This document shows, one piece after another, positions 26,129 to 59,233 of a stretch of 64,000 nt of DNA. Each line of letters starts with the position of its first letter. Position 1 is the stretch's first letter. Where the stretch lies: the IMG/VR virus record IMGVR_UViG_3300007770_001284, positions 62,001 through 126,000 of that record; one strand, given 5' to 3'. Position numbers and translations under genes: made by a program. The notes beneath the pieces are model-generated. The model worked only from the letters and a program-made list of their open reading frames with translations, had not been told where the DNA came from and did no database searches.

Positions 26129-26129
26129 C

Positions 26130-31499: not shown

Positions 31500-31997
31500 A
31501 TGGCGTTAACGAAATTAGGAGATAGACAAGTTTACTCTTTTAGGTCTGTTGGTGAACAAGCCGAGGCCCGGAAGCTTCGACAGAAAGAGCAAAAAAGGAA
31601 TATAGCTTTTGGGATTAAAACCCCCGTGGCGCTGTCGTCGGAGGGAACTGAGTTTATTAAAATGAATTATTCTATGGCTGATCAAGTTAGCGATAATTTT
31701 AAGAACTTAATCCTCACAAATCACGGTGAACGGTTGGGGTTTCCTGATTTCGGTGCGAACTTAATGGAGTTGTCGTTTGAGCTTCAAAGCGAAGATGGGC
31801 AAACTGAGGCGATAAATAGGATAAGTCGCGCCGTCGGTAAATACATGCCCTATGTGATTCCATCCACATTCGAACCCATTACTGAGTATTTTGACAACAA
31901 GAACGTCGCAAAAGTCGGTGTTAGAATCACTTATAGTGTTCCGAAGTTAAACGTCCAGAACAGGATTCTTGAAGTAATAATCTATAGCGCGAGTTGA
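31500..31997 (+). CDS. Baseplate wedge/sheath initiator (T4 gp25 / P2 gpW-like)
   Basis: Q...N.KNLILTNHGER...PDFGANL....FE and I..AV.KYMPYV. Confidence 0.9.
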   Translation: MALTKLGDRQVYSFRSVGEQAEARKLRQKEQKRNIAFGIKTPVALSSEGTEFIKMNYSMADQVSDNFKNLILTNHGERLGFPDFGANLMELSFELQSEDGQTEAINRISRAVGKYMPYVIPSTFEPITEYFDNKNVAKVGVRITYSVPKLNVQNRILEVIIYSAS

Positions 31998-44600: not shown

Positions 44601-47600
44601 AATGGGGCATGGTACCATCTTGTGCTTAGGTTCCACCCTGGGGAGTTCGCTCAGTCCGCTTCTCGCGGTGAGTACACCGGTACTGGAAACCCCGCGTCCT
44701 GCCAGGCATGGATAACAAGCGACCTCCCTGGTGTCACCATAGAAGGAGAAGACGCCGAAACCGTGCCGGCACAATGGGGCACTTACAAGGCGATGACTGC
44801 GACAATCGATCCGTCTGATTACGGCTCGATATATTGGGCCGGTTTCGAGGACGCTAACCATGACTGTGTGATAGGTAACCGTAACGACGGAGCGCGCGGC
44901 TTCAATGGCCAACTTGCCGATTTCCAGGTATGGAAGATGGAGGAAGGGTGCATCCCACACACAGGCGACACGGACACCAATCTCTCCGGATCTCTACGTT
45001 TTTTCCAGAATAACGACCTGGGCGTCACCGGTGCGCGCAACAGATTAGGAACTACGTTACCAGAATGGTACATGGAAGCACCGTCAAAATATAGTCCGAA
45101 GGCGCCGGGAGTACTTTCCCATGACGTTTTCTCGTATGGCCGATTTCCGCTTATGGGTGGTATGGGTGGTCAGCACGGCGACCAAGCCAATAGTCACCTC
45201 AGCAATCTCGGTAAGGGGATGTTGTTACCATCGGATGACGGATTTTACAAGGTCGTACAAAATCCAATGTTCGCCGGCGGGACCCCCGCCACCCAAGCGC
45301 CTAAGACGACGTTCAACGGAGCTATTCGTGAATTGATACCAACTATGTCTGTTCAAACCCCTGGCGGAGTACCTTTCTGGAGATGTGATACGTTCTTTCT
45401 AATGAGACAAGCAAAGGGCACTGTCGATCGCTCAAGCCCACAAAAAGCGCAGTACTCGACATTAGCGTCTCCTCAACGCTCGCGGCAGTGGCCAATGGAA
45501 GGCCGGAAGAAAGATTGGGATCCTGTTGTTCCCGACAAGTTTCCAATCACTTCCGTCTCAACCGATAAAATTAGAGAATTGATAACGTACGGTCAGATAG
45601 CTCATTACGGCTACACTCGTTCTACGTCCGACTGTCAGGCATTCAAGAGTGGTTCATCCTGGCAAGAAACTCACGTCTTGCGCAGCGGTATGTCTGGGTC
45701 AACCAACAAGTTCTATAATGTGGGCGCCTCTCCGAGGTCGGGGTTTCCGCACTCACTCTTCACGACGGTCAAACAACAATACCTCGATCCGATGGGGCTT
45801 GGATACCGGTCCCCAGATTCGTCAGGTCTCCCTTACGCCGACCTCCGCGGTGGTTCGCGACATCCCACAAAAGACATGCAGAACCCAGCGATCAAGTCGG
45901 AGTACGTCGGTCTCAATTTCTCGAATGCTTATTATCCATTCCAGGCGCGCTACAATACGCTTGGTATAGATACAGCGAATCTCGCCACGGGCAAGGGGGG
46001 CGCGCCTTCTGCTAACCTCCAAGGTCTTCCCACAATTTTTGTAGGTCAGCCGCACTCTGGATCGTACGAAGCGGGAGGTGGTTCTTTTGTTTCGAATCCG
46101 CTGTTATTCGTTTCTGAAGCAGCGGCAGTAGGATTGAATGAAGAGAATGCCACCATCGGCCACGGCGCGAATGATTTTTTTACGTGGGGCGGTTTTGGGA
46201 TTACTGGATCCTTGACGGGACAGACTCTTCTCGAAGCTGGTCTTCGCCGTGAGACTTCGATCAGATTGGATCACGGTGAGCGATTCGTTAAGCTGTGGGC
46301 TGCTGATCCCACACCTGGCGTATTAGGGTGGCGGGGTGGTGTCCCGCGCGGAGTTTGGGATCCAGCCACCGGCGACCTGGTCTCGACACCATGGTATAAG
46401 CTCAAGCCTTCCTCCGCGTATCTCGTCGCGACGGCGAGTCGGGAGCCGTGGCCAACCAATGTCCAATATTATCATACTGCTAGCCAGAATATCTTGAGCT
46501 CAGGAACATTTACGATGTTAACTGACATCAAGAATTCCAACGCCGCCGGCGCCGTCGCTGGAGGAACTTTCAACACTCTCTTTTACCAATATGATGCTCG
46601 CTGGGGGCCGGCCACCACTGTCGGTTCTTATGTTACTCCTGTCGTACCCCAGAATATAAGCGATAGCGAAGAAGGCGTCTTCTACCCGAGAGAAAGTAGT
46701 TATGTCCATCAAATTGACGAATTCACCAGCGTAAGTCATGTGTTCAGGAGTGTCGGCCTATCGTCTGGAAGATCAATCGTCAAGTCCGTCCCGGGGGATG
46801 TACCCACATCACAAAAATTATCGTATGTGCCCTCCGTGAAGGGGGTAGTGACGGGTGCATATAGCGACTTTCTCGAGTCATGGGATCCGCGATCTTTTTG
46901 GGGGGACTATGGGTGGACCGGTCCGATTGGCTCGGCTCATTTTGTCCAGACGTCCAGCTTTCAACCGATTGATTTTTCTAACCTAAGATCTACACTAACC
47001 CAGCAGGGTAATCAAGCGTATAGCGACTGGGTGGCCGTTTCACAGTATCACTTGAACCAATCACTGCCGTATGCCCCAGGCGCAGACTCTGAAGAATGGT
47101 CGACCACTTTCGAAGCACTGAAGTCGGCTTCTACAAACAATTCTGGTTATTTCGTCGCTGCAAATGCGGTAACGAACTGGCCGTTTTGTATCGGTGCGAT
47201 GACCCAAACGACAGGTACCCTAGCTCGTACATATACGTATAATTCTCCTTATGTACTAGAGCCTGGAGATAAACTGGTGCTTGGCTTCCAGCCGGCGATC
47301 GGTGGAATGAATGAGGGTGCTCCTAAGCCGTTGAACAGTATTTCTGGGCCATTTTCTAGAGCTGACGAGAAAGGGTATCAGGGTGTCGAGGGCAACGATT
47401 TCAGCGCAAAGAACGACCAGAGCACCCCAAATTATGTACCGAATGAGTTCCGACCTGGGGTCAATCGAAGGAACCTGTCTGAGCAGATCCGTCAAACTGT
47501 CTTGAAAGCCGGTAAAGCGCGACTTGTCTTGTACGGTACTCTGTTACGTGATAATAAACCTCATCCCGCGGAGTTGAACCAGCCCCTGGTCACAAACGCC

Positions 47601-48842
47601 GTACACGAGGCCCTTCACTTCGATAACCCGGTCATGGACCAGTTCTTGGTCGATGACAAGACAGCATACAGCGGTTCTTACCTGGATCAATATATAACAG
47701 GTAGCGCTCGATACATACCACAGGACGATAAGAAGGACAACCCCTTTTCGGGTGATCGTAATATCTACGTCCGGAAGGTGGCAGCCACTGGCTGGGATGG
47801 AAACCTGTCTTTTAACAAGTCATTGCAACGATTTGTGGTCTTGCCAGACCAAAGTGAAGTGTATTGGGACTCCGTTCTGCCCACTGTATCACAGATCTGG
47901 AAAATTGACGGGAAGACTCCCGACACATCTGGTCAGAATCTGTTCTATAGACTCCAGGCCTCGACTCGGTATTCCGATCCTAGCAGCAGCGAAGGGCTTG
48001 CCGCTGTAAATAATGGGTGGGTCGGCGCATTTCCTTTTGAGAGTAGATATGATGACGTGGATAGAGTATTGAAAGACCCCGCCGACCAATCGAGCTACCG
48101 CACCATTCCGCAACCAGGGCTGAACTACGGCTGGGCCCAGCTCATCCCCAGGCCTTTTAGGTGGGGATGGGCACGTCTCGGTCCGCCCCGAAGTCTTACT
48201 GCTTATCTCCAAAGCCCGCTGGTAAAGGCGGCTTACGCGTCGAGGGGGAAGCTCCTCACAGACCCGACTCTGGAGTGTCGACAATCAGAAGACACAGCAG
48301 ACAAGGCAATGGCTGCCGCTCTATTTGGATTCGCAACAACTGGTGGCGCATATTTCTATGATGGCTCGGGCTATCTTTCTTCCACCGGAGGTACCACAAA
48401 TGGATTTACCTGGAACCGCAAAAGCTTAAATACATACGCCATCCCCTCCAGCCAGCAGGCCTTCTCCATGCGTCTTGACCATCCAGAAGGTGTCAAGTAT
48501 GGCCTTAAGAATTATGTTTGGTCTTACACAAACGCAGTTTTTCGACCGGATAGATACGGCCAGCTGAGGGACATGTTAGAGCAACGACGTTATACGAAGT
48601 TCTTCAACACAGGAGACGATGAGACGCCTCGAGGGACAGGTGACGCCGCTGTTTCTTGTATTTTTGTTGATGCTGACGGTAATCCTATAGATGATGCTAG
48701 CAAAACATCATGCCAGAACATAAGCACGTTTATGACTTCTTCCATCCCGTATTTTGAGGGTGAGGCCCAACGGACTCCTACAACAAACCCATTCGTGTCT
48801 ATCGATATCGGTAATATGGTTTCTCGAACGACGCTTAGATAA
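41646..48842 (+). CDS. Giant (2398 aa) virion structural protein with LamG-like domains
   Basis: HYRFNE...ISELAIFD and WYHLVLRF...FNGQLADFQVW; conserved-looking C-terminus FRPDRYGQLRDMLEQR...S.PYF. Confidence 0.65.
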   Translation: MFRGKKTPFIPDLSRFISSEGAHGKRWDLSSSCLAHYRFNEYVDGGDDSAAIIPDRSGKQGGMNVVTGSITLGSMLPALPPELSLDREMFTDNRGDPSTVYSAELIPGTDRRAIRPYPKRTFDFSTRGGRFLLQEGLQGIDPVSTKGCTFVFRFKFAKSSTSTFNELIFSISQLNTTQVSFSVTSTSGVPTIELRVFTNQSETAANVSITQQEWYTIVGCVKDGSTSLEAWKEADGSQRPKNAQSISGIPVTLTNPQIFVGYGDYNSSPNSSFNDSNDWGQCSRISELAIFDGWISDELSQAIGSGWSDGSPGTTTSHTARFNRHTSGLDNRGPRTVLKRMDNELRTYPSISRTGDQGRLGNEPVTPFSDEDTLVFTTDTPVMFPDMLPTYLYESTRQGHLRSYHSGSGDRSGDDHRIETRITASADLSHRVRPGLMNKEVFIMNMSGSTADAGLRGGVEGTMAPFDDSRIDTSLTTATIATAKETMLGFDQKLGDRIAIVIDLSSETDTTMGHRSTLLISPNSEGPYDSYPYPLSQDTVRHPDPASINSICYYNFNTKGWDVTGTVSLDEVGSAPSGGVEVPGTGASGSFLMASTSIAFAATTGFAISPDEAEPLLPLAARGRPTDWFGFPFDQKWDASDSQLLDMSKYISAPFLLEKMEITHDMEFIESGDDGLGYVVRDGSDPGTLLAVSSSDSSKAIPGRARADRGAGTTLVTTNDLQGDLGHVPGHGGEGIGTVLCGDTSLQNLTDKNGNEYPGAHVPPESASCLTGPQGGQRRYTNPRGPWLRYRMDHDPNFSGKIYDSHPEGCRDSADIGLGETLFAFDQLGRTPWDGFLRAVAPSAALTMPTLDRNQTPSRGLQGCSYAFNGGTNGFVIGSGSQMNSYIGPHNPYRGNNGQALAYGDIWFSMWFRYLGAGGGSYGRLFHFGDDSNTGLGNMAAFFYDAGPGPKLYFNANYYQPALTSSAGSMHEAQWGTNDVVIDPSNGAWYHLVLRFHPGEFAQSASRGEYTGTGNPASCQAWITSDLPGVTIEGEDAETVPAQWGTYKAMTATIDPSDYGSIYWAGFEDANHDCVIGNRNDGARGFNGQLADFQVWKMEEGCIPHTGDTDTNLSGSLRFFQNNDLGVTGARNRLGTTLPEWYMEAPSKYSPKAPGVLSHDVFSYGRFPLMGGMGGQHGDQANSHLSNLGKGMLLPSDDGFYKVVQNPMFAGGTPATQAPKTTFNGAIRELIPTMSVQTPGGVPFWRCDTFFLMRQAKGTVDRSSPQKAQYSTLASPQRSRQWPMEGRKKDWDPVVPDKFPITSVSTDKIRELITYGQIAHYGYTRSTSDCQAFKSGSSWQETHVLRSGMSGSTNKFYNVGASPRSGFPHSLFTTVKQQYLDPMGLGYRSPDSSGLPYADLRGGSRHPTKDMQNPAIKSEYVGLNFSNAYYPFQARYNTLGIDTANLATGKGGAPSANLQGLPTIFVGQPHSGSYEAGGGSFVSNPLLFVSEAAAVGLNEENATIGHGANDFFTWGGFGITGSLTGQTLLEAGLRRETSIRLDHGERFVKLWAADPTPGVLGWRGGVPRGVWDPATGDLVSTPWYKLKPSSAYLVATASREPWPTNVQYYHTASQNILSSGTFTMLTDIKNSNAAGAVAGGTFNTLFYQYDARWGPATTVGSYVTPVVPQNISDSEEGVFYPRESSYVHQIDEFTSVSHVFRSVGLSSGRSIVKSVPGDVPTSQKLSYVPSVKGVVTGAYSDFLESWDPRSFWGDYGWTGPIGSAHFVQTSSFQPIDFSNLRSTLTQQGNQAYSDWVAVSQYHLNQSLPYAPGADSEEWSTTFEALKSASTNNSGYFVAANAVTNWPFCIGAMTQTTGTLARTYTYNSPYVLEPGDKLVLGFQPAIGGMNEGAPKPLNSISGPFSRADEKGYQGVEGNDFSAKNDQSTPNYVPNEFRPGVNRRNLSEQIRQTVLKAGKARLVLYGTLLRDNKPHPAELNQPLVTNAVHEALHFDNPVMDQFLVDDKTAYSGSYLDQYITGSARYIPQDDKKDNPFSGDRNIYVRKVAATGWDGNLSFNKSLQRFVVLPDQSEVYWDSVLPTVSQIWKIDGKTPDTSGQNLFYRLQASTRYSDPSSSEGLAAVNNGWVGAFPFESRYDDVDRVLKDPADQSSYRTIPQPGLNYGWAQLIPRPFRWGWARLGPPRSLTAYLQSPLVKAAYASRGKLLTDPTLECRQSEDTADKAMAAALFGFATTGGAYFYDGSGYLSSTGGTTNGFTWNRKSLNTYAIPSSQQAFSMRLDHPEGVKYGLKNYVWSYTNAVFRPDRYGQLRDMLEQRRYTKFFNTGDDETPRGTGDAAVSCIFVDADGNPIDDASKTSCQNISTFMTSSIPYFEGEAQRTPTTNPFVSIDIGNMVSRTTLR

Positions 48843-48898: not shown

Positions 48899-51800
48899 AT
48901 GGCACGTGAATCAAGGACATCTTTAAATAAATCTGATTTTTTGGTCATAAGATCGAAAACTGACGATTCTATCTTAAAGATAGTTTCTCCCCAGCACTTC
49001 CAGATCGGGTTCGATGATAAGGAATTTCATCGGATTCTCGCTGTCCATGGTAATGTTGAGGCCACAACGGTGTACGCTCCATCATTGTCTGGTTCTTTAA
49101 CACGCCTTGCTGATGGTACTACGTATCTACGCGAAGGGAACAATGTAACGATTACAACTGGTTCAGACGGCGCTGTTACGATTGCCGCGGGTACAGGCGC
49201 GCTGGTCGGGACGCTGTCGGGAGTAGAGGCGGACGGAATTCAAGACTTTACTTATGACGGAAGCGGAAACGCATCAGTAAAGGTAGACTTATATGACCGC
49301 GGAGGAATTACATTCTCTTCAAGTGGTCTGGGTCTGAATCCAAATGATGTAGACTCAGAATTAGCTGTGACCCCCGCCTCCGGAGACTTGCTGTTCATCT
49401 ACGATCTTGATGACCCCACTGCACGCAATGTAAAAAAGGTTTCCGTCTCCAACTTAATGGCGGCAGGCGCCGGTGGCACTTTGGCGAATGCCATTACTTT
49501 TGGAGACGGAATTTATGATTCTGCTTCTGGCGCAAGCTCATATAATAATACTGCCGCGGCAACAATCGCAGTAGATCTTGCGACAAATTCTGGTTTAGAA
49601 TTTAGTTCAAATAAATTAAAAGCCGATCTGGATGGCTCAACGTTAAGTGTAAATTCGTCTGGACTAAGCGTTGCGTCAGTACCGAATGCTTTAACACATG
49701 GAACGGGAATATCATCATTTAGTTATGACGGCGGCACAGCTAGCGTGGCAGTCGGTATCGATACATCTACGGTTCCTCTTTTGGCAAGTAGCAATACATG
49801 GTCTGGAACAAATACATTTGGTACACTGTTGGGGAAGCATGATGAGGTGTCTTCTGGCGTTCCATATCTTGTGGGCGGTAGCAACGTTACAATTTCTTAT
49901 GATACCCCGACTTCTGGCCAGATAACAATCGCTGCTTCGCTTGGTGCCGGAGGAGATCTTACCGCCGGGTCAGGTATTGGCACTTTTACGTATAATGGCA
50001 CAGGTGCAGCAACAGTTGGATTAGACGCAACATCGTTGTCTTCTGCTGGTACAAGGTCTTCATCTCTATTTGTGTCTGACGGCGGGACTACAATAACAAA
50101 ATCTACTGTGGGTACGTTGGTTGACCTGGTTGACAGAACCGTGCTGATGGCCGCGGCTTCGAACGGCGGGATCAACCTGAACTTTCAAGGTGCTGAGCTA
50201 CCAACTTTATTTTCTATTGATTTAGATGGCAGTACCCTTTCGATCGGAAATAACGGGATATCTGTTGCAAATTTGCCGTATGCAATTTCTCAAGGAACAG
50301 GCATTGATACATTTTCGTTTGACGGCTCTTCTACCCAGACAGTTGCAATCGACACTGCAGTGGTTCCTCGAAAGGGTGTCGACAATACGTGGACAGGGAA
50401 AAATACGTTTGGTATATCAACAACAGCGGGCTTAACTGGCTCTCTACAAGAAGTGTCTTCTGGTGTACCATATCTTGCCTGCGGTACAGGTGTAAGCATC
50501 GTTACGTCATCGAACGGACAGATAGTCGTTTCAACAGATGGCACAGAAATTACTGGTGTTACCGCTGGCCAGGGATTGACAGGTGGCGGTGCTTCCGGCG
50601 ATGTAACCCTGGCGGTTGATCTTGCATCAACCGCAGGCCTAGAATTTAGCTCTGATAAATTAAGGGTCAAGCTTGACGGCAGCACAATCGATATGGGTTC
50701 TTCTGGTATAAGCGTGGCGAATGTTCCAAATTCTTTGGCTCAAGGAACAGGGATATCAACGTTCACTTATGATGGTGGGACTTCTGGTATTACTGTTGGT
50801 ATTGATAATTCTGTCGTCGCGACATTAACTGGGTCTCAATTTAGCGGACCTGTTGTCTTTAATGCTGGTTTGTCTGGGTCGTTGACGCGGCTTCCTGATG
50901 GTACGTCATATCTCCGGCAGGGTGATAACGTCACGATAACGACGGGGTCTTCTGGTGAGATTACAATTAGCGCAATCGCTGGTGGTGGTGGCGTCGCGGA
51001 TGGTAATGCACAATATCTTGTTTTGGCCGCGACTAGTTCTCTCGCGCAAGAGAGAGTTATTACAATGGGGACAGGCCTTGCATCTAGCGACGACGGTGCA
51101 GGTAATGCGTACACTCTACGAGTGAAAGATAGCGAGTTTGCTGCATTAACTGGCTCGATTTTTTCCGGTGATGTTGTTGCGCAAGCAGGACTTTCCGGGT
51201 CCTTACAAGCGCTGTCTGATGGCACGTCATACCTCCGCGAGGGCTCGAATATTGCAATAGCAAGTTCCTCAGCGGGATATGTCACAGTGTCTTCTACTGA
51301 TACAACATACACAGCTGGTTCCGGCCTGGATCTTTCGGGTACCGCATTTAGTGTCGATCTTAAGAGCGGATCTGGCTTAGTAATTGACTCTGCCGAGCTT
51401 TCAATTGATGATTCTGTTTTAGCGACGATTACTGGGTCTACTTTTACTGGTACCGTGACCGCCCCAGCTCTTTCGGGTTCGCTTACAAGACTACAAGACG
51501 GGACTTCCTATCTACGACCAGGTAATGCTAATGTTATCATAACCTCTGCCTCAGCTGGGTATATTTCAATATCATCTACTGACACAGACACAACATACAC
51601 TGCTGGCGATGGTCTAGATCTTTCAGGCACCGAATTCAGTGTCGATCTTAAGAGCAACTCTGGGTTGGTGATTGATTCAACAGAGCTCTCTATAGACGAT
51701 TCGATTATTGCAACGATCACTGGATCGACCTTCACAGGCACGGTTACTGCTCCAGCTCTTTCTGGTTCACTCACCAAACTACAAGATGGGACATCTTACC

Positions 51801-53737
51801 TGATCGCAGGAAGTAACGTGACCATTACTACTGGCTCCTCTGGAGCTGTGACAGTAGCTGCGTCCGGTGGAGAAATATCAGTTGTTTCCGGTTCTTCTAG
51901 CGTTTCAAGCATCAGCACTCTAAACTTATCTAAGCTTGGAGTTATAAGCGATCTGGGCGGTGGCGTCGTCGCAGTCACTGGGTCTATAGGAGATGCTGAA
52001 GACGGTTCATATTCTGATGGGTTATTCACCGATTTCAGTACTGTAACACCAGTTGGGACAGCGGTGGATAGGTTTAACGAGGTCTTGAAGGGGCTTGCAC
52101 CCTCCGCCGCCCCAGGTCTAGACGATATGAACTGTTCAGACTCTGGTACTTCGGCTGTCCTTTCCTTCGGATCATCGCAGTCAATTTCCGGTTATACAAA
52201 TGCACGACCTTCCACGTTGACGCCCACTGACAATCTTTCTGATATCGATATTAATGGAACGTTTAATTCAACTGCCGCAAGTAATGACTTACGGCGCGCT
52301 TGTTTCGGCGGCTCGACAGTGATCAACGGAACGCTGAACGCCGACGTGTCAGCAGATGGTGTAAATTACGCCGCTTATTCATTCGGCAACGGTAATCAGG
52401 GAACTTTGAAACTTTTTGTAAATGATAATTCCACTGCAATACACTCTGTAGATTTAAGTTCATTCGGGTCTGGGAATTCTTTGAACGGAAACGGGTCTGG
52501 GTTTAACCTTTCTGCAACCACGCCAGGCCATTTTAGCGATAGCAGCAATTTCGAAACTTTCCAACACCGGCAAGGTACATACACAATCACCGCCGCTGAT
52601 CAGCAGAGCGGGTGGAACTACGCGAGGGTGGTGCACACAATAGCAGGCGCAGATATAACATGCAACTATGTGGAGTGGGTGAACGATCCCGATTCCAATG
52701 CATTGTCTTCCGATAATTCTGCCATGGATTCGCTTTCCATGACAGGAACTAAAAATCTTTCGGGAGTGAAATATAACACTGGCGGAACCGCTGAATATAG
52801 GATCCGCGTCTTGAATGCGTATCGTAATGTATATTCTACATCTACAATATCTTTTAACGGCACAAATTGCTCAGTCTCGTCTCAAGCGTTTCCATCTATC
52901 AATCATGCAGGCGGCGAAGATGAAACGAAAATTCTGCATCTTACTGGATCAGCGACGATTACAGGCGATCCTATTTTAGATGGGTCGATTTCTGTAAGTA
53001 CTAATGTACCCGCACCGCTAAAATCGAATCTTTCCAGCGCCGGCTCACAGTCAATAAGCGGAATTTTGTTATACGATCTATCTGATACATCCACCGCCAC
53101 GTCTGAGACGTTCAGGGGTGAAAGTTATAGATTAATATCAGGTAGCTATAATACTCAAGCTAACGTTACCGCTGGAGGGAGTGCTTGGGATTCTACAACA
53201 AGCCTCGCCGGCGTTGATGGCTTGCTTTTTTATAATAGCCGACTTTACGCGCCGCCCCAAGGAGGAGATTCTGGAGATTTTAGAAACACTTCTGACGGCG
53301 GGTCAATAACAAACGGTCCAAGTAGCAATGTAAATTATAGCGGTATCACGTCAGGCACAAGAACGTTTTATAGATATTTTCAGAACACATCAGGGGGCTC
53401 AAAGACAGGTTTCGATCTTACTATCAACGGATCAGGAACTATCGCTTCTCAAGCGACTACATTGACAACGTCGAACCTTCACGTGTTGATTAAGCTTCCG
53501 ACCACAACTGCTGCCTTTGAAACTGGGTGGATGGATTTGGCAATCTCATTCGCGACGGGACAAACCTCCGACGGCGACGGCTGCTTAGATGGAAGCTTAG
53601 ACTCATCGCTCAATGCGACTAACACTGCGACCTTCGGAACACAGTCAGTAGGCAGTAATGAATATATAGTTGTGAAAATAGAGGCAGACGCTTCATCAAC
53701 TGGGTACATTTCTAGTATGAGCGTTTCGTGGAGCTAA
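48899..53737 (+). CDS. Repeat-rich fibre-like virion protein (1612 aa)
   Basis: Ser/Gly/Thr-rich, with 7 copies (2 degenerate) of LSGSLxxLxDGTSYLxxGxNVTI plus other repeats, and a unique ~600-aa C-terminus. Confidence 0.7.
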   Translation: MARESRTSLNKSDFLVIRSKTDDSILKIVSPQHFQIGFDDKEFHRILAVHGNVEATTVYAPSLSGSLTRLADGTTYLREGNNVTITTGSDGAVTIAAGTGALVGTLSGVEADGIQDFTYDGSGNASVKVDLYDRGGITFSSSGLGLNPNDVDSELAVTPASGDLLFIYDLDDPTARNVKKVSVSNLMAAGAGGTLANAITFGDGIYDSASGASSYNNTAAATIAVDLATNSGLEFSSNKLKADLDGSTLSVNSSGLSVASVPNALTHGTGISSFSYDGGTASVAVGIDTSTVPLLASSNTWSGTNTFGTLLGKHDEVSSGVPYLVGGSNVTISYDTPTSGQITIAASLGAGGDLTAGSGIGTFTYNGTGAATVGLDATSLSSAGTRSSSLFVSDGGTTITKSTVGTLVDLVDRTVLMAAASNGGINLNFQGAELPTLFSIDLDGSTLSIGNNGISVANLPYAISQGTGIDTFSFDGSSTQTVAIDTAVVPRKGVDNTWTGKNTFGISTTAGLTGSLQEVSSGVPYLACGTGVSIVTSSNGQIVVSTDGTEITGVTAGQGLTGGGASGDVTLAVDLASTAGLEFSSDKLRVKLDGSTIDMGSSGISVANVPNSLAQGTGISTFTYDGGTSGITVGIDNSVVATLTGSQFSGPVVFNAGLSGSLTRLPDGTSYLRQGDNVTITTGSSGEITISAIAGGGGVADGNAQYLVLAATSSLAQERVITMGTGLASSDDGAGNAYTLRVKDSEFAALTGSIFSGDVVAQAGLSGSLQALSDGTSYLREGSNIAIASSSAGYVTVSSTDTTYTAGSGLDLSGTAFSVDLKSGSGLVIDSAELSIDDSVLATITGSTFTGTVTAPALSGSLTRLQDGTSYLRPGNANVIITSASAGYISISSTDTDTTYTAGDGLDLSGTEFSVDLKSNSGLVIDSTELSIDDSIIATITGSTFTGTVTAPALSGSLTKLQDGTSYLIAGSNVTITTGSSGAVTVAASGGEISVVSGSSSVSSISTLNLSKLGVISDLGGGVVAVTGSIGDAEDGSYSDGLFTDFSTVTPVGTAVDRFNEVLKGLAPSAAPGLDDMNCSDSGTSAVLSFGSSQSISGYTNARPSTLTPTDNLSDIDINGTFNSTAASNDLRRACFGGSTVINGTLNADVSADGVNYAAYSFGNGNQGTLKLFVNDNSTAIHSVDLSSFGSGNSLNGNGSGFNLSATTPGHFSDSSNFETFQHRQGTYTITAADQQSGWNYARVVHTIAGADITCNYVEWVNDPDSNALSSDNSAMDSLSMTGTKNLSGVKYNTGGTAEYRIRVLNAYRNVYSTSTISFNGTNCSVSSQAFPSINHAGGEDETKILHLTGSATITGDPILDGSISVSTNVPAPLKSNLSSAGSQSISGILLYDLSDTSTATSETFRGESYRLISGSYNTQANVTAGGSAWDSTTSLAGVDGLLFYNSRLYAPPQGGDSGDFRNTSDGGSITNGPSSNVNYSGITSGTRTFYRYFQNTSGGSKTGFDLTINGSGTIASQATTLTTSNLHVLIKLPTTTAAFETGWMDLAISFATGQTSDGDGCLDGSLDSSLNATNTATFGTQSVGSNEYIVVKIEADASSTGYISSMSVSWS
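51293..51800 (+). repeat. Tandem intragenic duplication, 288-bp period
   Basis: gtgtcgatcttaagagc at 51351 and 51639; the peptide TYTAGxGLDLSGTxFSVDLKS...DGTSYL occurs twice. Confidence 0.85.
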
Positions 53738-53740
53738 CCT

Positions 53741-56104
53741 ATGGCGTATGATGCAAAAACTGAGCGCTTGATTTCGCTTAAGAAATTAGCGGGTAAAGCG
53801 CAGACATCAAACGATAAGGGTCTTTCTAACGAGGGACTGCCGTCAGGTATAACTACAACTTCTGAAAATATATTCGGAGAATCGGTCACTACCAGCCCAT
53901 CCAACACCGCGCTATATACAATCACGGGACAGGTGGAATACCTCAGATTTCCCGCAACGTTTATTGCCGGTAGCGATACATCGGATGGTCGACACGGATT
54001 TGAATTAAAGCTTCCATCTGATTATGAATCCAATTCATCGAATTCAAAGGCGGGTACGTACCCGTTCCAGAATGATCAAGTCATTAATATAACGTCTGGA
54101 TCGTTACAACTTATACCTCCATCTTTTGCGTCATCATACGAGGCAAAGCCGTATTACGGTGGTAATTCGTCCAAGGGATCAGGTACACTAATTCCGCTAC
54201 TGGACGCTCGAGATTGGTATCTAGATTATTTTAACGGAGTGTTCTTCCAGCAGGACCCATCTGGAACTGGAGACCAGGCGGATAATCCTGACTTTATTGA
54301 GGGCTATCTGTATATTGGTGATATGCTGGACACTGTTGTCGCGTCAGCTGGCGGTGCAGGAGATGGTGATCCTGCTGCACAATATCTTGTTTTGGCCGCC
54401 ACCGCATCGCTATCGAATGAGCGTGTGTTTACAGCAGGAACAGGAATAAAGACTACTGATTCTGGTGCCGGTGCTGCCTATACGATCGCAGTTAGAGATT
54501 CAATTGTCGCAACTTTAACTGGTTCAACATTTTCAGGAACAGTTTCTGCTCCCGCATTGTCCGGTTCATTAACGAATCTGCAGGATGGTACTAGCTACTT
54601 GATTGCTGGAAGTAATACGACAATAGTGACAGGTTCTTCAGGAGCCATTACAATTTCATCGACTGGAGGTATTGATGGTTCTGGAGCAGCAAACAGAATT
54701 GCGACCTGGTCAGATTCAGATACGCTAACATCTGATGCTGACTTTACGTGGAACGGGTCTCTTTTAGATGTCCAGGGTGACGTAAATCTTAACGGAACTG
54801 TGGTGGTAAACCAGAGCGGAGTCGATAAAAACTTTAGGGTAGAAACCCAAAATAAAAGTAGCGCCTTGCAGGTAGACGGTGAAACAGACCAAGTACTTCT
54901 ATTTTCCGGAAGTCTTTCTGATGCTTCTGGTCACGGCTCGTCAGCAGCAGACCCTGACCCAAGAACGTTCACTGACACTAATTTCTTCGTGTCTGGATCT
55001 ATCGATTCTCGAAATACTTCAAGGAGAGGTACTTCTGTTTTCGGTGGTGATGTTGTAGTATCCGGAACGTTATCTGTCAACAGGGGTCAGGCGGGTGTTG
55101 GTAGCATGTTTACCGTTACATCAGATGGTAAAGTTGGCATTGGGTCTGATACTCCTTCTTATAAGCTTTCTGTTGGCGGAAATATGGACGTGGGAGAGTA
55201 CATCTACCACAAAAATGATGCCAACACTTTTATTCGGTTTCAGCCAGATGATATAAACATTCAAGCTGGTGGTGTCGATCTTATAAAAATGACAGAATCA
55301 GGTGCCAATACACAGATACTGATTTTATCTGGTGGCGGCACCTCAGATCCCAACCCCGCTAATTTTGGTGATACTAGTTTCTTTGTATCTGGAAGTATAG
55401 GGAGTATTGGGACATCAACAGGGGGTTCATCTGTTTTCGGTGGGGATGTACTTGCTTCTGGGTCTGTTGTAGCGTTGGCCGGCCTATCCGCGTCTTTACA
55501 ACAACTTAGCGATGGTACATCATATCTTCGGGAAGGGCCGAACGTTACTATAACATCAGCCTCTGATGGTTCAATAACTATTTCTTCGACAGGAGGCAGC
55601 GGTTCTCCCGGCGGAAGCAATACGCAGATTCAATTTAACGATAGTAACACTTTTGGTGGCGACAGCACATTCACGTTTAATAAGGTAACGAATACTTTAA
55701 GCGTGCCCGCATTGTCGGGTTCATTGACGCGGCTCGTTGACGGTACGTCGTATCTTCGGTCTGGTACTGGTATCTCTATAACCACCGGATCATCTGGTTA
55801 TGTTCAAGTTAGTAATACTGGGGTATCCGAAAGACAGAGACAGAGCTATTTTCTAGCACAATCGTATTCTGCCGGGGTGAATGTTCCAGTGTCATCGACA
55901 AATTTTGCGACGGTATCTTATGACATTGGTTTGATCGACGTTTTATTGAATGGACAGTTATTGCATTCTGGCACAGCAGCGCAGGTAACAGCAGATCCTG
56001 TGGAACGAGATTACTATGTGACTGGTGCATCATCATTAAAATTTGCGTTTGATATTGAAATTGATGATGTTCTCGATGTAATGGTATACAAGGTAGTAAG
56101 CTAG
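53741..56104 (+). CDS. Fibre-like virion protein (787 aa) sharing repeats with the 48899 protein
   Basis: Three DGTSYL repeats, two FFVSGSI...SVFGGDV repeats, GKVGIG and a C-terminal LNGQLL domain. Confidence 0.7.
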   Translation: MAYDAKTERLISLKKLAGKAQTSNDKGLSNEGLPSGITTTSENIFGESVTTSPSNTALYTITGQVEYLRFPATFIAGSDTSDGRHGFELKLPSDYESNSSNSKAGTYPFQNDQVINITSGSLQLIPPSFASSYEAKPYYGGNSSKGSGTLIPLLDARDWYLDYFNGVFFQQDPSGTGDQADNPDFIEGYLYIGDMLDTVVASAGGAGDGDPAAQYLVLAATASLSNERVFTAGTGIKTTDSGAGAAYTIAVRDSIVATLTGSTFSGTVSAPALSGSLTNLQDGTSYLIAGSNTTIVTGSSGAITISSTGGIDGSGAANRIATWSDSDTLTSDADFTWNGSLLDVQGDVNLNGTVVVNQSGVDKNFRVETQNKSSALQVDGETDQVLLFSGSLSDASGHGSSAADPDPRTFTDTNFFVSGSIDSRNTSRRGTSVFGGDVVVSGTLSVNRGQAGVGSMFTVTSDGKVGIGSDTPSYKLSVGGNMDVGEYIYHKNDANTFIRFQPDDINIQAGGVDLIKMTESGANTQILILSGGGTSDPNPANFGDTSFFVSGSIGSIGTSTGGSSVFGGDVLASGSVVALAGLSASLQQLSDGTSYLREGPNVTITSASDGSITISSTGGSGSPGGSNTQIQFNDSNTFGGDSTFTFNKVTNTLSVPALSGSLTRLVDGTSYLRSGTGISITTGSSGYVQVSNTGVSERQRQSYFLAQSYSAGVNVPVSSTNFATVSYDIGLIDVLLNGQLLHSGTAAQVTADPVERDYYVTGASSLKFAFDIEIDDVLDVMVYKVVS

Positions 56105-56476: not shown

Positions 56477-59233
56477 ATGCCCCAAAAAACAAAAATGAGA
56501 TTGCTCCAGCTCTCTGGTGGACTCGCAAGCAACAATGCTGCTGCTTTTGAATTCGTCGATGGTTCTGGCGCATCTGATCAATCATATTTAAGATTTGATA
56601 CGGTATCAGGTCAATCAGAGTTTGGTGCTCCTGTCGTTATCGGTACCGATGGTGCCACTGCCGGTGATATCAAGCTCACCACAGACAATAACGGTGAGAT
56701 CATCTGGGAAGGCTCTTCCGCTGATGGTAACGAGAATAAGCTGCGCGCTGAAGACGGTGCTGGCGTAAACACGTTACCTGCATCGACAGGTACTATCCTG
56801 ACAACCGCCACCGCTGTTACAGTGGAACAAGGTGGTACAGGAGCAACATCGCTAACAGACGGTGGTATCCTACTTGGTAACGGCTCTGGCGCTATTCAGG
56901 CGATGAACGTTCTTTCCGATGGTGAGATGCTTGTTGGTGACGGTACGACTGACCCCGCCGTTGAAAGCGGAGCAACACTTCGCACAAGCATTGGTGTTGG
57001 TACTGGTGACAGTCCACAATTTACAGGTATTGAACTTGGTCATGCATCTGACACTACACTTACAAGGCAAGGTTCTGGCGATGTTAACATTGAAGGAAAC
57101 ATCATCTACCGTGCTGGTGGAACAGACGTTGCGATTGCTGATGGTGGAACCGGTGCTTCAACTGCCGCTGCTGCTGCAAGCGCTTTGGGTGTTGGAACTG
57201 AGGATAGCCCACAGTTTACTGGCTTGAATCTCGAGTCTTCTACCTCCAACTTGCCGCTGGCGATCCTGAAAAACACCAACTCCGACGCCTTAGGTGCTCG
57301 TCTTCGGTTTGTTAAAGATAAGGGCGCCGCAGGTGCTGATGGCGATGATGTTGGTAGCATTGAGTGGCTCGGTGATGATGCTGGTCAAAACGCGACCGCG
57401 TTTGGAAAAATTCTGGTAGAGGTCTCTGAGTCTGATGATACTGACGAAGCAGGTAAAATGTCATTGTTCGTCGCAGAAAGTAACGGGACAACGACAACTC
57501 TTACTGCTGGTCTGATACTAGAGGGTGAGCACGCAACAGATGGCCAGGTTGATGTAACAATCGGCGCTGGTTCTGCGTCTACAACGACAATTGTGGGCGA
57601 GGCAATTATTGCTGGTGATCTAACTGTTCAGGGAACGACAACTACAGTCAACCAGACGATTATCGAGAGTACAGTAGATGTCCTCGTGTTCGAAGGTGCT
57701 ACTGCCAATGCCCACGAGACTACGCTTAAGGTTGTTGAACCAACTGCTGATTGTTCTTTCGCATTGCCAACGCTGACTGCGGGTAACTACTTCATTCCAG
57801 CAATCACTGATACAGCTACTGATGCGTCTACGGCTGTTACTGCTGCGGAGTTTGCACTCCTCGACGGTGACTCAAATGTTGCAACTGTTACTGTTGCCGA
57901 CAACGACGGTGTGCTCTTCAACGACGCCGGCACAATGAAGCAGGTCACGGTACAGTCTCTTGCTGCATACTATGATGATGAGATAACAGCTATGCCAAAC
58001 CTTGTTACAATCGGTAAGGCTGCTGCTACAACAGATATCGCAGCTGGTGACCTCACCATGTACAATGCTGTAAACGATGGTAACCCCACAATCAGAGTAG
58101 GTAAAGATGCTGCTGACAGCCTCGGTATCGCAGTGAGCTACGCGTCAGGTGCTCAGACCCTTGAAAAGGTCGAGTTCTCCACCGCGTCGTCCACAGGTAA
58201 TGCTGACGACGGTAAATTTGTCTTTGATGTTGATGGGACAGATATTCTGTCCATCGGTGACGCAGGCGTCAGCATATCAGCAAGCATGGCTTACGCGGTA
58301 GCTGGCACTGCGATTCTGTCCGACAGTGGCGGCACAATGACGCTGTCAAATGTTGATGCTATTGACGCAACAACTGAAAGCACTATTGAAGCTGCGATTG
58401 ATTCCCTCGTTGAACTTACTACAATCGGTAAGGCTGCTGCTACAACCAACATTGCCGCTGGCGATGTTACGATGTACAATGCTGTAAATGATGGTAATCC
58501 TTCGATCAGAGTAGGTAAAGATGCTGCTGACAGCCTTGGCATAACAGTGAGCTACGCGTCAGGTGCTCAGACCCTTGAAAAGGTCGAGTTTGCCACCGCG
58601 TCGTCCACAGCTAATGCTGACGACGGTAGGTTCATCTTCGATGTCGACGGTACTGATATAGTCACAATCGGTGATGCTGGGCTAGAGCTCAAGGACGACG
58701 CCACGATTGGGAGCCTCTCGGACCATGACTTGTTAACTCTTGGGAATGCCATTCTCACTGTTGCGGGTGAAGTATCTATGACTACGCTCGATATCGGCGG
58801 GACAAACGTGACTGCAACCGCTACAGAGCTTAGTTTGCTGGACGGTGATGTTGGCAATGACGCTTCGATAACGATTGCCGACACTGATGGAATCCTTGTC
58901 GACGACGGCGGGGCAATGAAGAAGGTACCTGCTAGCGATCTTAAGACTTTCATCGGTTCCGGTCAAACCACAAAAGGCTACACCGAAGTCGGTACGGCCG
59001 TTGCTGCCGACGCTAACGTGTCTGTGCCTACGATCAATGCAGCCTCTTGGGGACAAGCTGATATATCCGCCGCTACTGATAGAGAGATATACCTGAACGG
59101 TCAGCTCTTGATGCCTGGAGCTTCTGCTGCATCAAACAAGGACTGGTATAACGAGGGTACAACTAATGGCATCGTCCGATTCGAGTTTGGTCTTGAAGTC
59201 GGTGATGTTTTGACATTCGTTCTTAGATCTTAA
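56477..59233 (+). CDS. Tail/head fibre-like protein (918 aa) with internal duplications
   Basis: GGTGA repeats, GDLTVQGTTTTVN fibre motif and a C-terminal YLNGQLL...GDVLTF domain. Confidence 0.7.
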   Translation: MPQKTKMRLLQLSGGLASNNAAAFEFVDGSGASDQSYLRFDTVSGQSEFGAPVVIGTDGATAGDIKLTTDNNGEIIWEGSSADGNENKLRAEDGAGVNTLPASTGTILTTATAVTVEQGGTGATSLTDGGILLGNGSGAIQAMNVLSDGEMLVGDGTTDPAVESGATLRTSIGVGTGDSPQFTGIELGHASDTTLTRQGSGDVNIEGNIIYRAGGTDVAIADGGTGASTAAAAASALGVGTEDSPQFTGLNLESSTSNLPLAILKNTNSDALGARLRFVKDKGAAGADGDDVGSIEWLGDDAGQNATAFGKILVEVSESDDTDEAGKMSLFVAESNGTTTTLTAGLILEGEHATDGQVDVTIGAGSASTTTIVGEAIIAGDLTVQGTTTTVNQTIIESTVDVLVFEGATANAHETTLKVVEPTADCSFALPTLTAGNYFIPAITDTATDASTAVTAAEFALLDGDSNVATVTVADNDGVLFNDAGTMKQVTVQSLAAYYDDEITAMPNLVTIGKAAATTDIAAGDLTMYNAVNDGNPTIRVGKDAADSLGIAVSYASGAQTLEKVEFSTASSTGNADDGKFVFDVDGTDILSIGDAGVSISASMAYAVAGTAILSDSGGTMTLSNVDAIDATTESTIEAAIDSLVELTTIGKAAATTNIAAGDVTMYNAVNDGNPSIRVGKDAADSLGITVSYASGAQTLEKVEFATASSTANADDGRFIFDVDGTDIVTIGDAGLELKDDATIGSLSDHDLLTLGNAILTVAGEVSMTTLDIGGTNVTATATELSLLDGDVGNDASITIADTDGILVDDGGAMKKVPASDLKTFIGSGQTTKGYTEVGTAVAADANVSVPTINAASWGQADISAATDREIYLNGQLLMPGASAASNKDWYNEGTTNGIVRFEFGLEVGDVLTFVLRS
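58006..58680 (+). repeat. Intragenic direct repeat, ~260-bp units with a 414-bp period
   Basis: acaatcggtaaggctgctgctacaac at 58007 and 58421; 46-bp identical block at 58131-58176 and 58545-58590. Confidence 0.92.

What the first reader, a model, noticed from the sequence alone, without database searches (positions are those of the whole stretch)
49076..55800. ~32-aa 'LSGSLxxLxDGTSYLxxGxNVTITTGSSG' module repeated 10 times across two genes
Seen: 7 copies in the 48899 protein (~49076, 49823, 50426, 50861, 51185, 51461, 51749; two are SGVPYL variants) and 3 in the 53741 protein (~54548, 55478, 55703), separating different spacer modules. Most copies carry two [ST]-[GA]-S sites. A second ~60-aa module (AQYLVLAAT...ERV) is also shared, including an exact 24-bp match (51007-51030 and 54376-54399). 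Inference: a fibre 'joint' repeat I do not recognise, which permits module shuffling and may be the main glycan carrier.
Basis: seen in the sequence. Interest (0 to 1): 0.6.

Follow-up and report, generated by a model that had tools for sequence, protein, structure and literature searches.

The report
Undescribed trimeric fibre repeat of marine jumbo phages
The ten repeats are real: they are a conserved ~53-residue building block of two adjacent, probably trimeric, tail-fibre proteins of a marine jumbo T4-like phage. The block is common in related uncultured phages and absent from every family library searched, but nothing shows that it is a hinge or carries sugars.

Summary
Observation confirmed. 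The module occurs 7 times in the 1612-aa protein (48899-53737) and 3 times in the 787-aa protein (53741-56104), and nowhere else in the 254.7-kb viral record. HMM E-values per copy run from 4e-13 to 7e-27. With its N-terminal strand the unit is about 53 aa, not 32.

It alternates with a small set of short spacer modules and a few larger domains. Pfam, NCBIfam, PHROGs, PDB sequences and T4 gp34, gp37 and gp12 gave no match. The module is nevertheless common in related proteins from uncultured viruses. I found 770 instances in 204 sampled proteins, 1-20 per protein, mostly on contigs of one lineage of 280-295-kb phages with a gp23-like capsid protein.

A three-copy model of residues 688-1000 gave ipSAE 0.76 in 2 of 3 runs (0.00 in the third), best control 0.00, partner pLDDT at least 53. 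The interface runs along the whole piece, modules included. So this is a rigid shaft node, not a hinge.

Module shuffling is partly supported: copy number varies, proteins are mosaic, and breakpoints fall at module edges. DNA identity between copies is only 47-75%, so the duplications are old.

The glycan-carrier idea has no direct support. The first S-G-S site lies in the modelled trimer interface. Only the second, at a hairpin tip, lies outside it.

New variant of a known kind; moderate interest.

The parts
48899..53737 (+). Fibre gene 1 (P0001, 1612 aa): short N-terminus, 7 LSGSL modules with spacers (aa 51-991), non-repetitive C-terminal region of about 620 aa
53741..56104 (+). Fibre gene 2 (P0002, 787 aa): conserved N-terminal domain, modA, LSGSL, middle region of about 260 aa, LSGSL-modC-LSGSL, C-terminal domain of about 90 aa
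49049..49195 (+). LSGSL module 1 (P0001 aa 51-99)
   Evidence: (E 3e-21)
49787..49945 (+). LSGSL module 2, SGVPYL variant (P0001 aa 297-349)
   Evidence: (E 4e-13)
50399..50545 (+). LSGSL module 3, SGVPYL variant (P0001 aa 501-549)
   Evidence: (E 2e-15)
50825..50983 (+). LSGSL module 4 (P0001 aa 643-695)
   Evidence: (E 7e-27)
51146..51304 (+). LSGSL module 5 (P0001 aa 750-802); in the modelled trimer interface
51428..51586 (+). LSGSL module 6 (P0001 aa 844-896); in the modelled trimer interface
51716..51871 (+). LSGSL module 7 (P0001 aa 940-991); in the modelled trimer interface
54515..54670 (+). LSGSL module 8 (P0002 aa 259-310); core 94% identical in protein to module 7
55454..55597 (+). 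LSGSL module 9 (P0002 aa 572-619)
55670..55822 (+). LSGSL module 10 (P0002 aa 644-694)
50987..51142 (+). Spacer module A (AQYLVL...ERV...hairpin), P0001 aa 697-748; contains the 24-bp identity at 51007-51030
54359..54514 (+). Spacer module A, P0002 aa 207-258; contains the 24-bp identity at 54376-54399
51299..51427 (+). Spacer module B (TYTAGxGLxL...), P0001 aa 801-843
   Evidence: E 2.5e-24
51587..51715 (+). Spacer module B, second copy, P0001 aa 897-939 (96-aa tandem unit with module 7)
50549..50620 (+). Spacer module D (DITxVxAGxGL...), P0001 aa 551-574
   Evidence: E 5e-12
55592..55684 (+). Spacer module C (VQFNDxxxFGG...), P0002 aa 618-648
   Evidence: E 4e-16
53741..54358 (+). Conserved N-terminal domain of P0002 (aa 1-206). 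Many 600-750-aa relatives share it, as do the huge phages LR756500-503. Presumed attachment domain; fold not matched.
51872..53734 (+). Non-repetitive C-terminal region of P0001 (aa 992-1612), presumed distal or receptor-binding part; no family match

Best explanation
The module is a conserved structural repeat of about 53 aa in the shafts of homotrimeric phage fibres. Its motif is [ST]G[ST]xF[ST]G-x7-LSGSLTxLxDGTSYLxAGxN[IV]TI[TS][TS][GA]SxGx[IV]TIS.

The two genes lie in the baseplate/fibre block of a marine jumbo phage with T4-type core genes. Inferred mechanism: each module contributes a leading strand, the LSGSL segment and a beta-hairpin. The three chains interdigitate around the three-fold axis. 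The near-invariant L, L, Y, L and I side chains and the small G and S residues pack inside, and the hairpin tip faces solvent.

The module has the same ends everywhere: a '...DSVVAT' lead-in and a G-rich exit. It therefore behaves as a standard trimer node. Between successive nodes sit four recurrent short spacer types (A, B, C, D), other short spacers or whole globular domains, apparently without loss of trimer register. That would explain the mosaic, variable-length fibres (1-20 nodes) across the lineage.

Shown: the repeat, its conservation, its distribution and the mosaicism. Predicted: the trimer and the burial of residues. Inferred: the role as a register-keeping node.
For: - Ten copies, confined to the two genes.
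- Gene context: a gp6-like baseplate wedge at 31994-33844 and Laminin_G_3 proteins just upstream. The record has a gp23-like MCP.
- Three-copy model of P0001 688-1000: ipSAE 0.76 in 2 of 3 runs (0.00 in run 2), best of 3 controls 0.00. The runs agree in at least 1% of their contacts and the partner's pLDDT is at least 53 (90 in the two scoring runs). About 1,280 contacts span residues 704-987, with same-residue contacts 748-748 and 817-817. In the tool's calibration the mark was reached by 21 of 30 proteins solved as pairs of one chain and 0 of 23 solved as single chains. That calibration used two copies, not three.
- The monomer model is extended, with one beta-hairpin per module and pLDDT 66. 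Fibre pieces typically behave this way when they fold only as oligomers (my own knowledge).
- 738 distinct instances show G18 99%, S19 98%, L20 94%, L23 95%, G26 98%, Y29 92%, G33 94%, S42 96%, G44 99%, I48 89%.
- Protein identity of 63-94% against DNA identity of 47-75% among the canonical copies indicates purifying selection on structure.
- 770 instances in 204 sampled proteins, 1-20 per protein. Spacing peaks at 70-120 aa. Four recurrent spacer types account for 240 of the 353 short spacers.
- Some relatives end in an endosialidase tail-spike Pfam domain.
- 18 of 22 long module-bearing contigs carry the same 620-667-aa gp23-like MCP.
Against: - There are no coordinates or experimental structure. 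One of the three complex runs scored 0.00. The complex model was made without an alignment, and its calibration used dimers, not trimers.
- No cultured phage with the module was found, so no virion protein data exist.
- The register-keeping role is an inference from architecture. It could equally be a plain shaft repeat with no special role in modularity.
- The tblastn searches of GenBank phages returned nothing even at E 10. I suspect low-complexity masking, so absence from cultured phages rests on PHROGs and on 5 checked genomes only.
Confidence: 0.75

Rival explanations
1. Mechanical joint: the module is a flexible hinge between stiff fibre segments.
For: It sits between different spacer modules. 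It ends in a G-rich stretch. Long phage fibres do have kinks; the T4 knee is an example (my own knowledge).
Against: In the three-copy model the modules lie inside a continuous, confident interface: residues 753-773, 775-785, 853-866, 868-876 and 949-962, with pLDDT 90. The module is the most conserved and hydrophobic-patterned part of the fibre. Hinges are usually the least conserved part. Up to 20 copies per protein at a period of 80-110 aa would make the fibre a chain of hinges.
Confidence: 0.07
2. Glycan carrier: the conserved [ST]-[GA]-S serines are O-glycosylation acceptors for the phage's own glycosyltransferases. This is compatible with a structural role.
For: A locus of about 27 kb immediately upstream encodes GT11, GT2/GT7C and two GT4 enzymes, GDP-mannose 4,6-dehydratase, an epimerase, a UDP-Glc/GDP-Man dehydrogenase and an aminotransferase. 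The serines S19 and S42 are 98% and 96% conserved. The second site is never among the interface residues, so it may be exposed. Virion glycosylation by phage enzymes is known in mycobacteriophages (cited in PMC12619734).
Against: There is no direct evidence. [ST]-[GA]-S is not a sequon known to me. The first site is in the modelled trimer interface in all three modelled modules. Small residues at turns and at the axis are expected to be conserved for packing alone. The Bacteroidota sequon D-[ST]-[AILVMT] is not enriched: 11 observed against 12.5 expected in P0001, and 4 against 5.5 in P0002. The glycan locus could instead modify DNA or the host surface.
Confidence: 0.1
3. Recombination linker: the module's main significance is at the DNA level, as conserved sequence where homologous recombination swaps fibre segments. 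The conserved motifs of T-even distal fibre genes work this way.
For: Homology breakpoints between P0002 and its relatives cluster at residues 198-205, 248-273 and 307-323, which are the edges of modA and LSGSL. P0007 carries the same segments with an internal duplication. In marine populations, contigs break into variant bubbles from 54520, the start of module 8. Relatives diverge at 51587/51621, the boundary between module 6 and modB. Chimeric joints run 51798>55455 and 54654>50573. One 24-bp identity links the two genes.
Against: Copies within the genome share only 47-75% DNA identity. No exact repeat of 18 nt or more lies in an LSGSL module. The 24-mer is not found in any relative at up to 3 mismatches. 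Local-alignment ends and assembly breaks fall at repeats for technical reasons, and the joints have sides of only 29-33 nt.
Confidence: 0.3
4. The module is part of a monomeric Ig-like or carbohydrate-binding beta-sandwich (CBM_X2 or FnIII type) strung along a non-trimeric protein.
For: Precomputed PF03442 (CBM_X2) labels on several homologues, and weak RbmA-FnIII or CBM_X2 matches in 5-8 of the 39 unit sequences.
Against: Those Pfam scores are sums of short partial stretches of 20-55 residues, and none passes on its own. P0001 and P0002 have no hit at E 1 or below. The monomer model does not fold into a sandwich. The three-copy model is confident and intertwined.
Confidence: 0.04

Closest known systems
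Shaft repeats of T4 long and short tail fibres (gp34, gp37, gp12)
   Same: Homotrimeric, beta-rich, intertwined fibres built from repeated short units. They are encoded next to baseplate genes of a phage with T4-type core genes. They have an N-terminal attachment part and a C-terminal distal part.
   Different: No detectable sequence relation: hhalign probability is 0.2%, 0.1% and 1.0%. This unit is longer (about 53 aa), far more strongly conserved, and interleaved with a defined set of spacer modules.
Triple beta-spiral repeats of adenovirus fibre and reovirus sigma1 (about 15 aa)
   Same: A repeat built on a beta-hairpin, with conserved hydrophobic and glycine positions, that folds only in the trimer. 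The adenovirus shaft 1v1i was among the top, non-significant, Foldseek rows.
   Different: Unit length and motif differ. The Foldseek E-value was 7, which is no evidence of a shared fold.
Conserved-motif-mediated swapping in T-even distal fibre or adhesin genes (Tetart, Desplats and Krisch 1998; from my own knowledge, not checked here)
   Same: Conserved motifs flank variable segments, giving mosaic fibres with exchanged specificity.
   Different: There the motifs are conserved in DNA and act as recombination sites. Here conservation is at the protein level, with DNA identity of 47-75%.
Moraphages and other aquatic jumbo phages with T4-type core genes (PMC12619734)
   Same: Aquatic, up to about 300 kb, gp6/gp19/gp25/sheath core genes and several core glycosyltransferases. 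The window's relatives are 281-293 kb when complete, and the nearest cultured MCP is from a Flavobacterium phage.
   Different: Membership was not tested, because their genomes were not available to me. The paper does not describe fibre repeats.

Membership tests
Any Pfam-A family, including the phage fibre repeat families (Phage_fiber_rpt PF22337 and DUF5907 PF19264 were suggested by the Atlas) | Match to the family HMM at or near the gathering score | tested here: not met
   hmmscan of P0001-P0004 at E 1 or below gave no fibre family, only noise under the cut-offs. The 39 unit sequences gave only sub-threshold CBM_X2 or FnIII noise. The Atlas leads had TM of 0.41 or below.
PHROGs and NCBIfam families | Match to a family HMM | tested here: not met
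   No PHROG at E 0.01 or below for P0001-P0004. No relevant NCBIfam at E 1 or below.
Proteins with a solved structure (PDB) | Sequence-profile match of the module or of the modA+LSGSL unit | tested here: not met
   Profiles A1 and A2 against 177,635 PDB sequences gave only chance hits at E 0.5 or above.
T4 gp34, gp37 and gp12 fibre repeats | Profile-sequence homology | tested here: not met
   hhalign probability 0.2%, 0.1% and 1.0%.
CBM_X2 (PF03442) | A contiguous match of about 83 aa to the Ig-like domain | tested here: not met
   In the homologues the score is summed from partial stretches of 20-55 residues. Zero stretches pass on their own.
Homotrimeric phage fibre (generic kind) | Self-association into an extended, intertwined trimer | tested here: met
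   By prediction only. ipSAE 0.76 in 2 of 3 runs, best control 0.00, and an interface along residues 704-987. The runs agree in at least 1% of contacts and the partner's pLDDT is at least 53. The calibration used dimers.
Homotrimeric phage fibre (generic kind) | Encoded in the tail or baseplate module of a tailed phage | tested here: met
   gp6-like wedge at 31994-33844. gp23-like MCP elsewhere in the record. A gene pair of one long fibre plus one 600-1100-aa fibre recurs in relatives.
Homotrimeric phage fibre (generic kind) | Presence in the virion and receptor binding | not testable with these tools
   No cultured phage and no proteome.
T4 gp9/gp10 N-terminal domain (PF07880), for the N-terminus of P0002 | HMM or profile match, or shared fold | tested here: not met
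   No Pfam hit. hhalign against T4 gp10 gave probability 0.1%. The best fold match was Z 4.2, to an unrelated chain.
O-glycosylated virion protein | Glycan attached to the module's serines | not testable with these tools
   Context only. The first site is buried in the model.

The most novel reading that the evidence does not exclude
The LSGSL node is a previously undescribed, lineage-wide 'universal connector' of marine jumbo-phage fibres. Its invariant hairpin-tip serine (position 42) would be decorated by the phage's own 27-kb fucose/aminosugar glycosylation locus. The result would be a glycan-coated, freely re-assortable fibre: a phage counterpart of the glycosylated fibrils of giant viruses.
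Probability: 0.08. Interest if true: 0.7.

Novelty: new variant of a known kind. Interest (0 to 1): 0.4.

Why it matters
Fibres decide host range, and the fibres of uncultured marine jumbo phages are almost wholly unannotated. A sharply conserved 53-aa node that marks fibre genes (1-20 copies each) gives a simple profile for finding and segmenting receptor-binding proteins in metagenomes of this lineage. It also supplies a candidate new repeat family for Pfam. It is a tractable target for structural work: a small, predicted-trimeric unit. If the node tolerates heterologous inserts, it documents a natural modular design for fibres. It does not change the general picture of how phage fibres are built.

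Tried and rejected
- blastn of the two genes against GenBank phages gave no match.
- tblastn of module-containing pieces gave nothing even at E 10. I suspect low-complexity masking, so I do not use it as evidence of absence.
- The search for related loci with the 10-copy alignment failed for lack of a conserved stretch. A single copy worked.
- The AF2 monomer of modA+LSGSL had pLDDT 66. Foldseek on it gave nothing, and the model is too poor to interpret.
- The AF2 model of the P0002 N-terminal domain had pLDDT 70 and pTM 0.68. The best Foldseek E-value was 0.1 and the best VIA Z was 4.2, so there is no assignable fold.
- The Atlas leads (gp9/10_N, DUF5907, Phage_fiber_rpt, Nucleocytoviricota clusters) were all below useful thresholds and were not confirmed by HMMs.
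- The CBM_X2 and FnIII labels turned out to be summed noise.
- The Bacteroidota O-glycosylation sequon is not enriched.
- Full-text search for the motif strings and for DUF5907 found nothing relevant.
- Single-linkage clustering of spacers collapsed into one cluster, so I used motif classes instead.
- I did not run the large representative-protein search.


Full report
**Where the window lies**

The window is bases 62001-126000 of a single 254,743-bp IMG/VR viral record that CheckV rates 75% complete. The record encodes a 635-aa gp23-like major capsid protein: Pfam Gp23, 221 bits, with an insertion between profile positions of about 72 and 128. The nearest cultured relatives by MCP are Flavobacterium phage immuto (47% identity), Microcystis phage Mel-JY01 and Rhodothermus phage RM378. 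The best match overall is the uncultured huge phage LR756508, at 51%.

Gene P0002 occurs near-identically in marine and seawater metagenome runs of two studies, one of which may be the source. Parts of it occur in several more studies. The window therefore comes from a marine jumbo myovirus with T4-type core genes. It resembles the 'moraphage' type of aquatic jumbo phage (PMC12619734), but I could not test membership.

**Gene context**

All large genes lie on the + strand.
- Positions 1-27290 encode sugar-nucleotide and glycosyltransferase enzymes: GT11, GT2/GT7C, an aminotransferase, a UDP-Glc/GDP-Man dehydrogenase, an epimerase, GDP-mannose 4,6-dehydratase and two GT4 enzymes.
- A gp6-like baseplate wedge gene lies at 31994-33844.
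- Two Laminin_G_3 proteins lie at 35405-41646.
- A 2398-aa protein follows (P0003, 41646-48842).
- Then come P0001 (48899-53737, 1612 aa), P0002 (53741-56104, 787 aa) and P0004 (56477-59233, 918 aa).

**The observation**

Per-copy HMM E-values run from 4e-13 to 7e-27. A tblastn of one copy against the whole record finds those ten places and no others. Copies 2 and 3 of P0001 are the divergent SGVPYL variants. Seven of the ten copies have two [ST]-[GA]-S sites.

The second shared module (modA, AQYLVL...ERV) is at P0001 697-748 and P0002 207-258. The 24-bp identity 51007-51030 = 54376-54399 is exact and isolated. The only other exact repeat of 18 nt or more in the two genes is 51350/51638, inside a 96-aa tandem unit.

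A preceding [ST]G[ST]xF[ST]G strand belongs to it, which makes about 53 aa.

**Architecture**

- P0001: N-terminus (1-50), node 1, 195-aa spacer, node 2, 148-aa spacer, node 3, modD plus spacer, node 4, modA, node 5, modB, node 6, modB, node 7, then a non-repetitive region of about 620 aa.
- P0002: N-terminal domain of 206 aa, modA, node 8, about 260 aa, node 9, modC, node 10, then a C-terminal domain of about 90 aa. The distal part of that domain resembles the C-terminus of P0004.

**Not a described family**

- Pfam at E 1 or below, NCBIfam and PHROGs give nothing for P0001-P0004.
- The 39 modA+node unit sequences give only sub-threshold noise.
- The CBM_X2 labels on some homologues are sums of short partial stretches, none passing on its own.
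- Profiles of the node (A1) and of modA+node (A2) find no PDB sequence.
- hhalign against T4 gp34, gp37 and gp12 gives probabilities of 1% or less.
- Full-text searches for the motif found nothing relevant.

**But widespread**

- A word-based protein search with P0002 200-700 returned more than 1,044 hits among only 8,000 scored candidates. Many come from TARA and GOS marine data, and none carries a functional name.
- One scan of IMG/VR with a single copy gave 124 confirmed relatives at 70 loci. In those loci 118 ORFs carry 1-20 copies.
- Pooling the loci and the protein hits gives 770 instances in 204 proteins. Spacing peaks at 70-120 aa.
- Across 738 distinct instances the core is nearly invariant: G18 99%, S19 98%, L20 94%, L23 95%, G26 98%, Y29 92%, G33 94%, S42 96%, G44 99%.
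- Of the short spacers between nodes, 240 of 353 fall into four recurrent types (A 54, B 46, C 46, D 94). The other 113 are unclassified, and longer spacers hold larger domains.
- A gene pair of one long fibre followed by a 600-1100-aa fibre recurs in relatives. The shorter protein often starts with the P0002-type N-terminal domain.
- Eighteen of 22 long module-bearing contigs carry the same 620-667-aa gp23-like MCP. The three records that are at least 90% complete are 281-293 kb.
- The module is absent from immuto, Mel-JY01, RM378, LR756508 and LR756502.
- Among one genome each of about 185,000 prokaryote species, only one MAG contig was confirmed (Bdellovibrionota, L079).

**Structure**

The AF2 monomer of modA+node is extended, with one beta-hairpin per module and pLDDT 66. 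Foldseek finds nothing.

Three copies of P0001 688-1000 gave these results.
- ipSAE was 0.76 in two of three runs and 0.00 in the third. The best of three controls was 0.00.
- pLDDT was 90 in the two scoring runs, and the partner's pLDDT is at least 53 across runs. The runs agree in at least 1% of their contacts.
- About 1,280 contacts run from residue 704 to 987.
- In the tool's calibration the mark was reached by 21 of 30 proteins solved as pairs of one chain and 0 of 23 solved as single chains. That calibration used two copies, so the counts hold only roughly here.

Same-residue contacts (748-748, 817-817) mark a symmetry axis. Inter-chain contacts such as 795-797 with 780-782 show that the node hairpin packs on a neighbouring chain.

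In all three modelled nodes the LSGSL segment, and so the first S-G-S site, is in the interface. The hairpin tip with the second [TS]-[GA]-S site (788-791, 883-885, 977-982) is never listed there. I had no coordinates, so I cannot name the fold class.

**Evolution**

Canonical copies are 63-94% identical in protein over the 19-aa core but only 47-75% in DNA. Node 7 of P0001 and node 8 of P0002 are the closest pair (94% protein, 70% DNA), so the nearest relatives sit in different genes.

The duplications are therefore old and held by selection on the protein. The 24-bp identity stands out against a clearly lower background identity in the flanking DNA. It is absent from all relatives at up to 3 mismatches. 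It looks like a private micro-conversion or a coincidence, not a conserved DNA signal.

Evidence for mosaicism at module edges comes from two sources.
- High-identity segments shared between P0002 and its relatives start or end at residues 198-205, 248-273, 307-323 and 444-452. P0007 carries P0002 1-307 and 198-446 at two different places.
- In marine populations, contigs of near-identical strains split into variant bubbles from 54520, the start of node 8, to 55053. Relatives diverge at 51587/51621, the boundary of node 6 and modB. Two chimeric joints link node 7 to node 9, and the end of node 8 to modD.

The joints have sides of only 29-33 nt, and repeats break assemblies anyway. I treat these data as suggestive, not conclusive.

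**Interpretation**

The best reading is a conserved trimer node of a modular fibre shaft (confidence 0.75). 'Hinge' is not supported. 'Shuffling' is partly supported as an evolutionary pattern, but not as ongoing DNA-level recombination at the node.

'Glycan carrier' rests only on the neighbouring glycan locus and on the conserved serines. One of the two sites is buried in the model, and the Bacteroidota sequon is not enriched.

**Other domains**

The P0002 N-terminal domain also occurs in huge phages LR756500-503 at 25-31% identity. It gave a moderate model (pLDDT 70, pTM 0.68) with no convincing fold match: best Foldseek E-value 0.1, best VIA Z 4.2. It shows no relation to T4 gp10. The P0001 C-terminal region of 620 aa has no family and only weak Atlas leads.

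**Verdict**

Mechanistically it is a variant of the well-known theme of repeat-built trimeric phage fibres. Interest is moderate (0.4).

Noticed in passing
window 1-27290: A sugar-nucleotide and glycosyltransferase locus of about 27 kb lies directly upstream of the baseplate genes. It holds GT11 (650-1450), GT2/GT7C (1435-2424), an aminotransferase (6248-7306), a UDP-Glc/GDP-Man dehydrogenase (7306-8535), a Zn-dependent dehydrogenase (13818-14834), an epimerase (21838-22848), GDP-mannose 4,6-dehydratase (22833-23897, 432 bits) and two GT4 enzymes (24875-27290). The set looks like a GDP-fucose/aminosugar pathway. Its target (virion, DNA or host surface) is unknown.
   Followed up: partly
window 56477-59233 (P0004): A third fibre-like protein without LSGSL nodes. 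It has a 138-aa tandem duplication (aa 511 and 649; nt 58007-58834) whose first 88 residues or so are about 90% identical. Its C-terminal 50 aa or so resemble the C-terminus of P0002 (E 9e-8).
   Followed up: partly
window 35405-48842: Two Laminin_G_3 (concanavalin-like lectin) proteins of 1191 and 888 aa, and a 2398-aa protein with only a weak LamG trace, sit between the gp6-like wedge gene and the fibres. None has a PHROG match.
   Followed up: no
G000:C1:149802-151709 (outside the window); G006 and G007: The gp23-like MCP is 635 aa, with an insertion of about 200 aa between Pfam positions of about 72 and 128. This form is shared by 18 of 22 related contigs. Two relatives (G006, G007) carry two tandem MCP paralogues.
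   Followed up: partly
window 53741-54358 (P0002 aa 1-206): This N-terminal domain is conserved in many 600-750-aa fibre proteins. It is also found in the 462-735-kb huge phages LR756500-503 (25-31% identity), which lack the LSGSL node where checked (LR756502 only). No fold match reached Z 4.2 or above.
   Followed up: yes
window 54520-55053: In two near-identical marine populations the assemblies split into co-existing variants here: 12 differences in 183 nt and 19 in 216 nt, after which one variant runs on into unlike sequence past 55053. This is a microdiversity hot spot inside P0002 that starts at node 8.
   Followed up: partly
L079 445-2553 (MAG contig JBBAUR010000009.1, Bdellovibrionota): The only prokaryote-genome hit. 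A 703-aa ORF at the start of an 89-kb contig carries LSGSL-modC-LSGSL, the same order as the C-terminal half of P0002. It may be a prophage or a mis-binned viral contig.
   Followed up: partly
window 51007-51030 and 54376-54399: The 24-bp identity between the two modA copies is private to this genome and its near-identical contigs. The flanking DNA is much less alike. Given identical amino acids, I estimate the chance of eight identical codons at about 1e-4 from rough codon frequencies, so a micro gene conversion is possible.
   Followed up: yes
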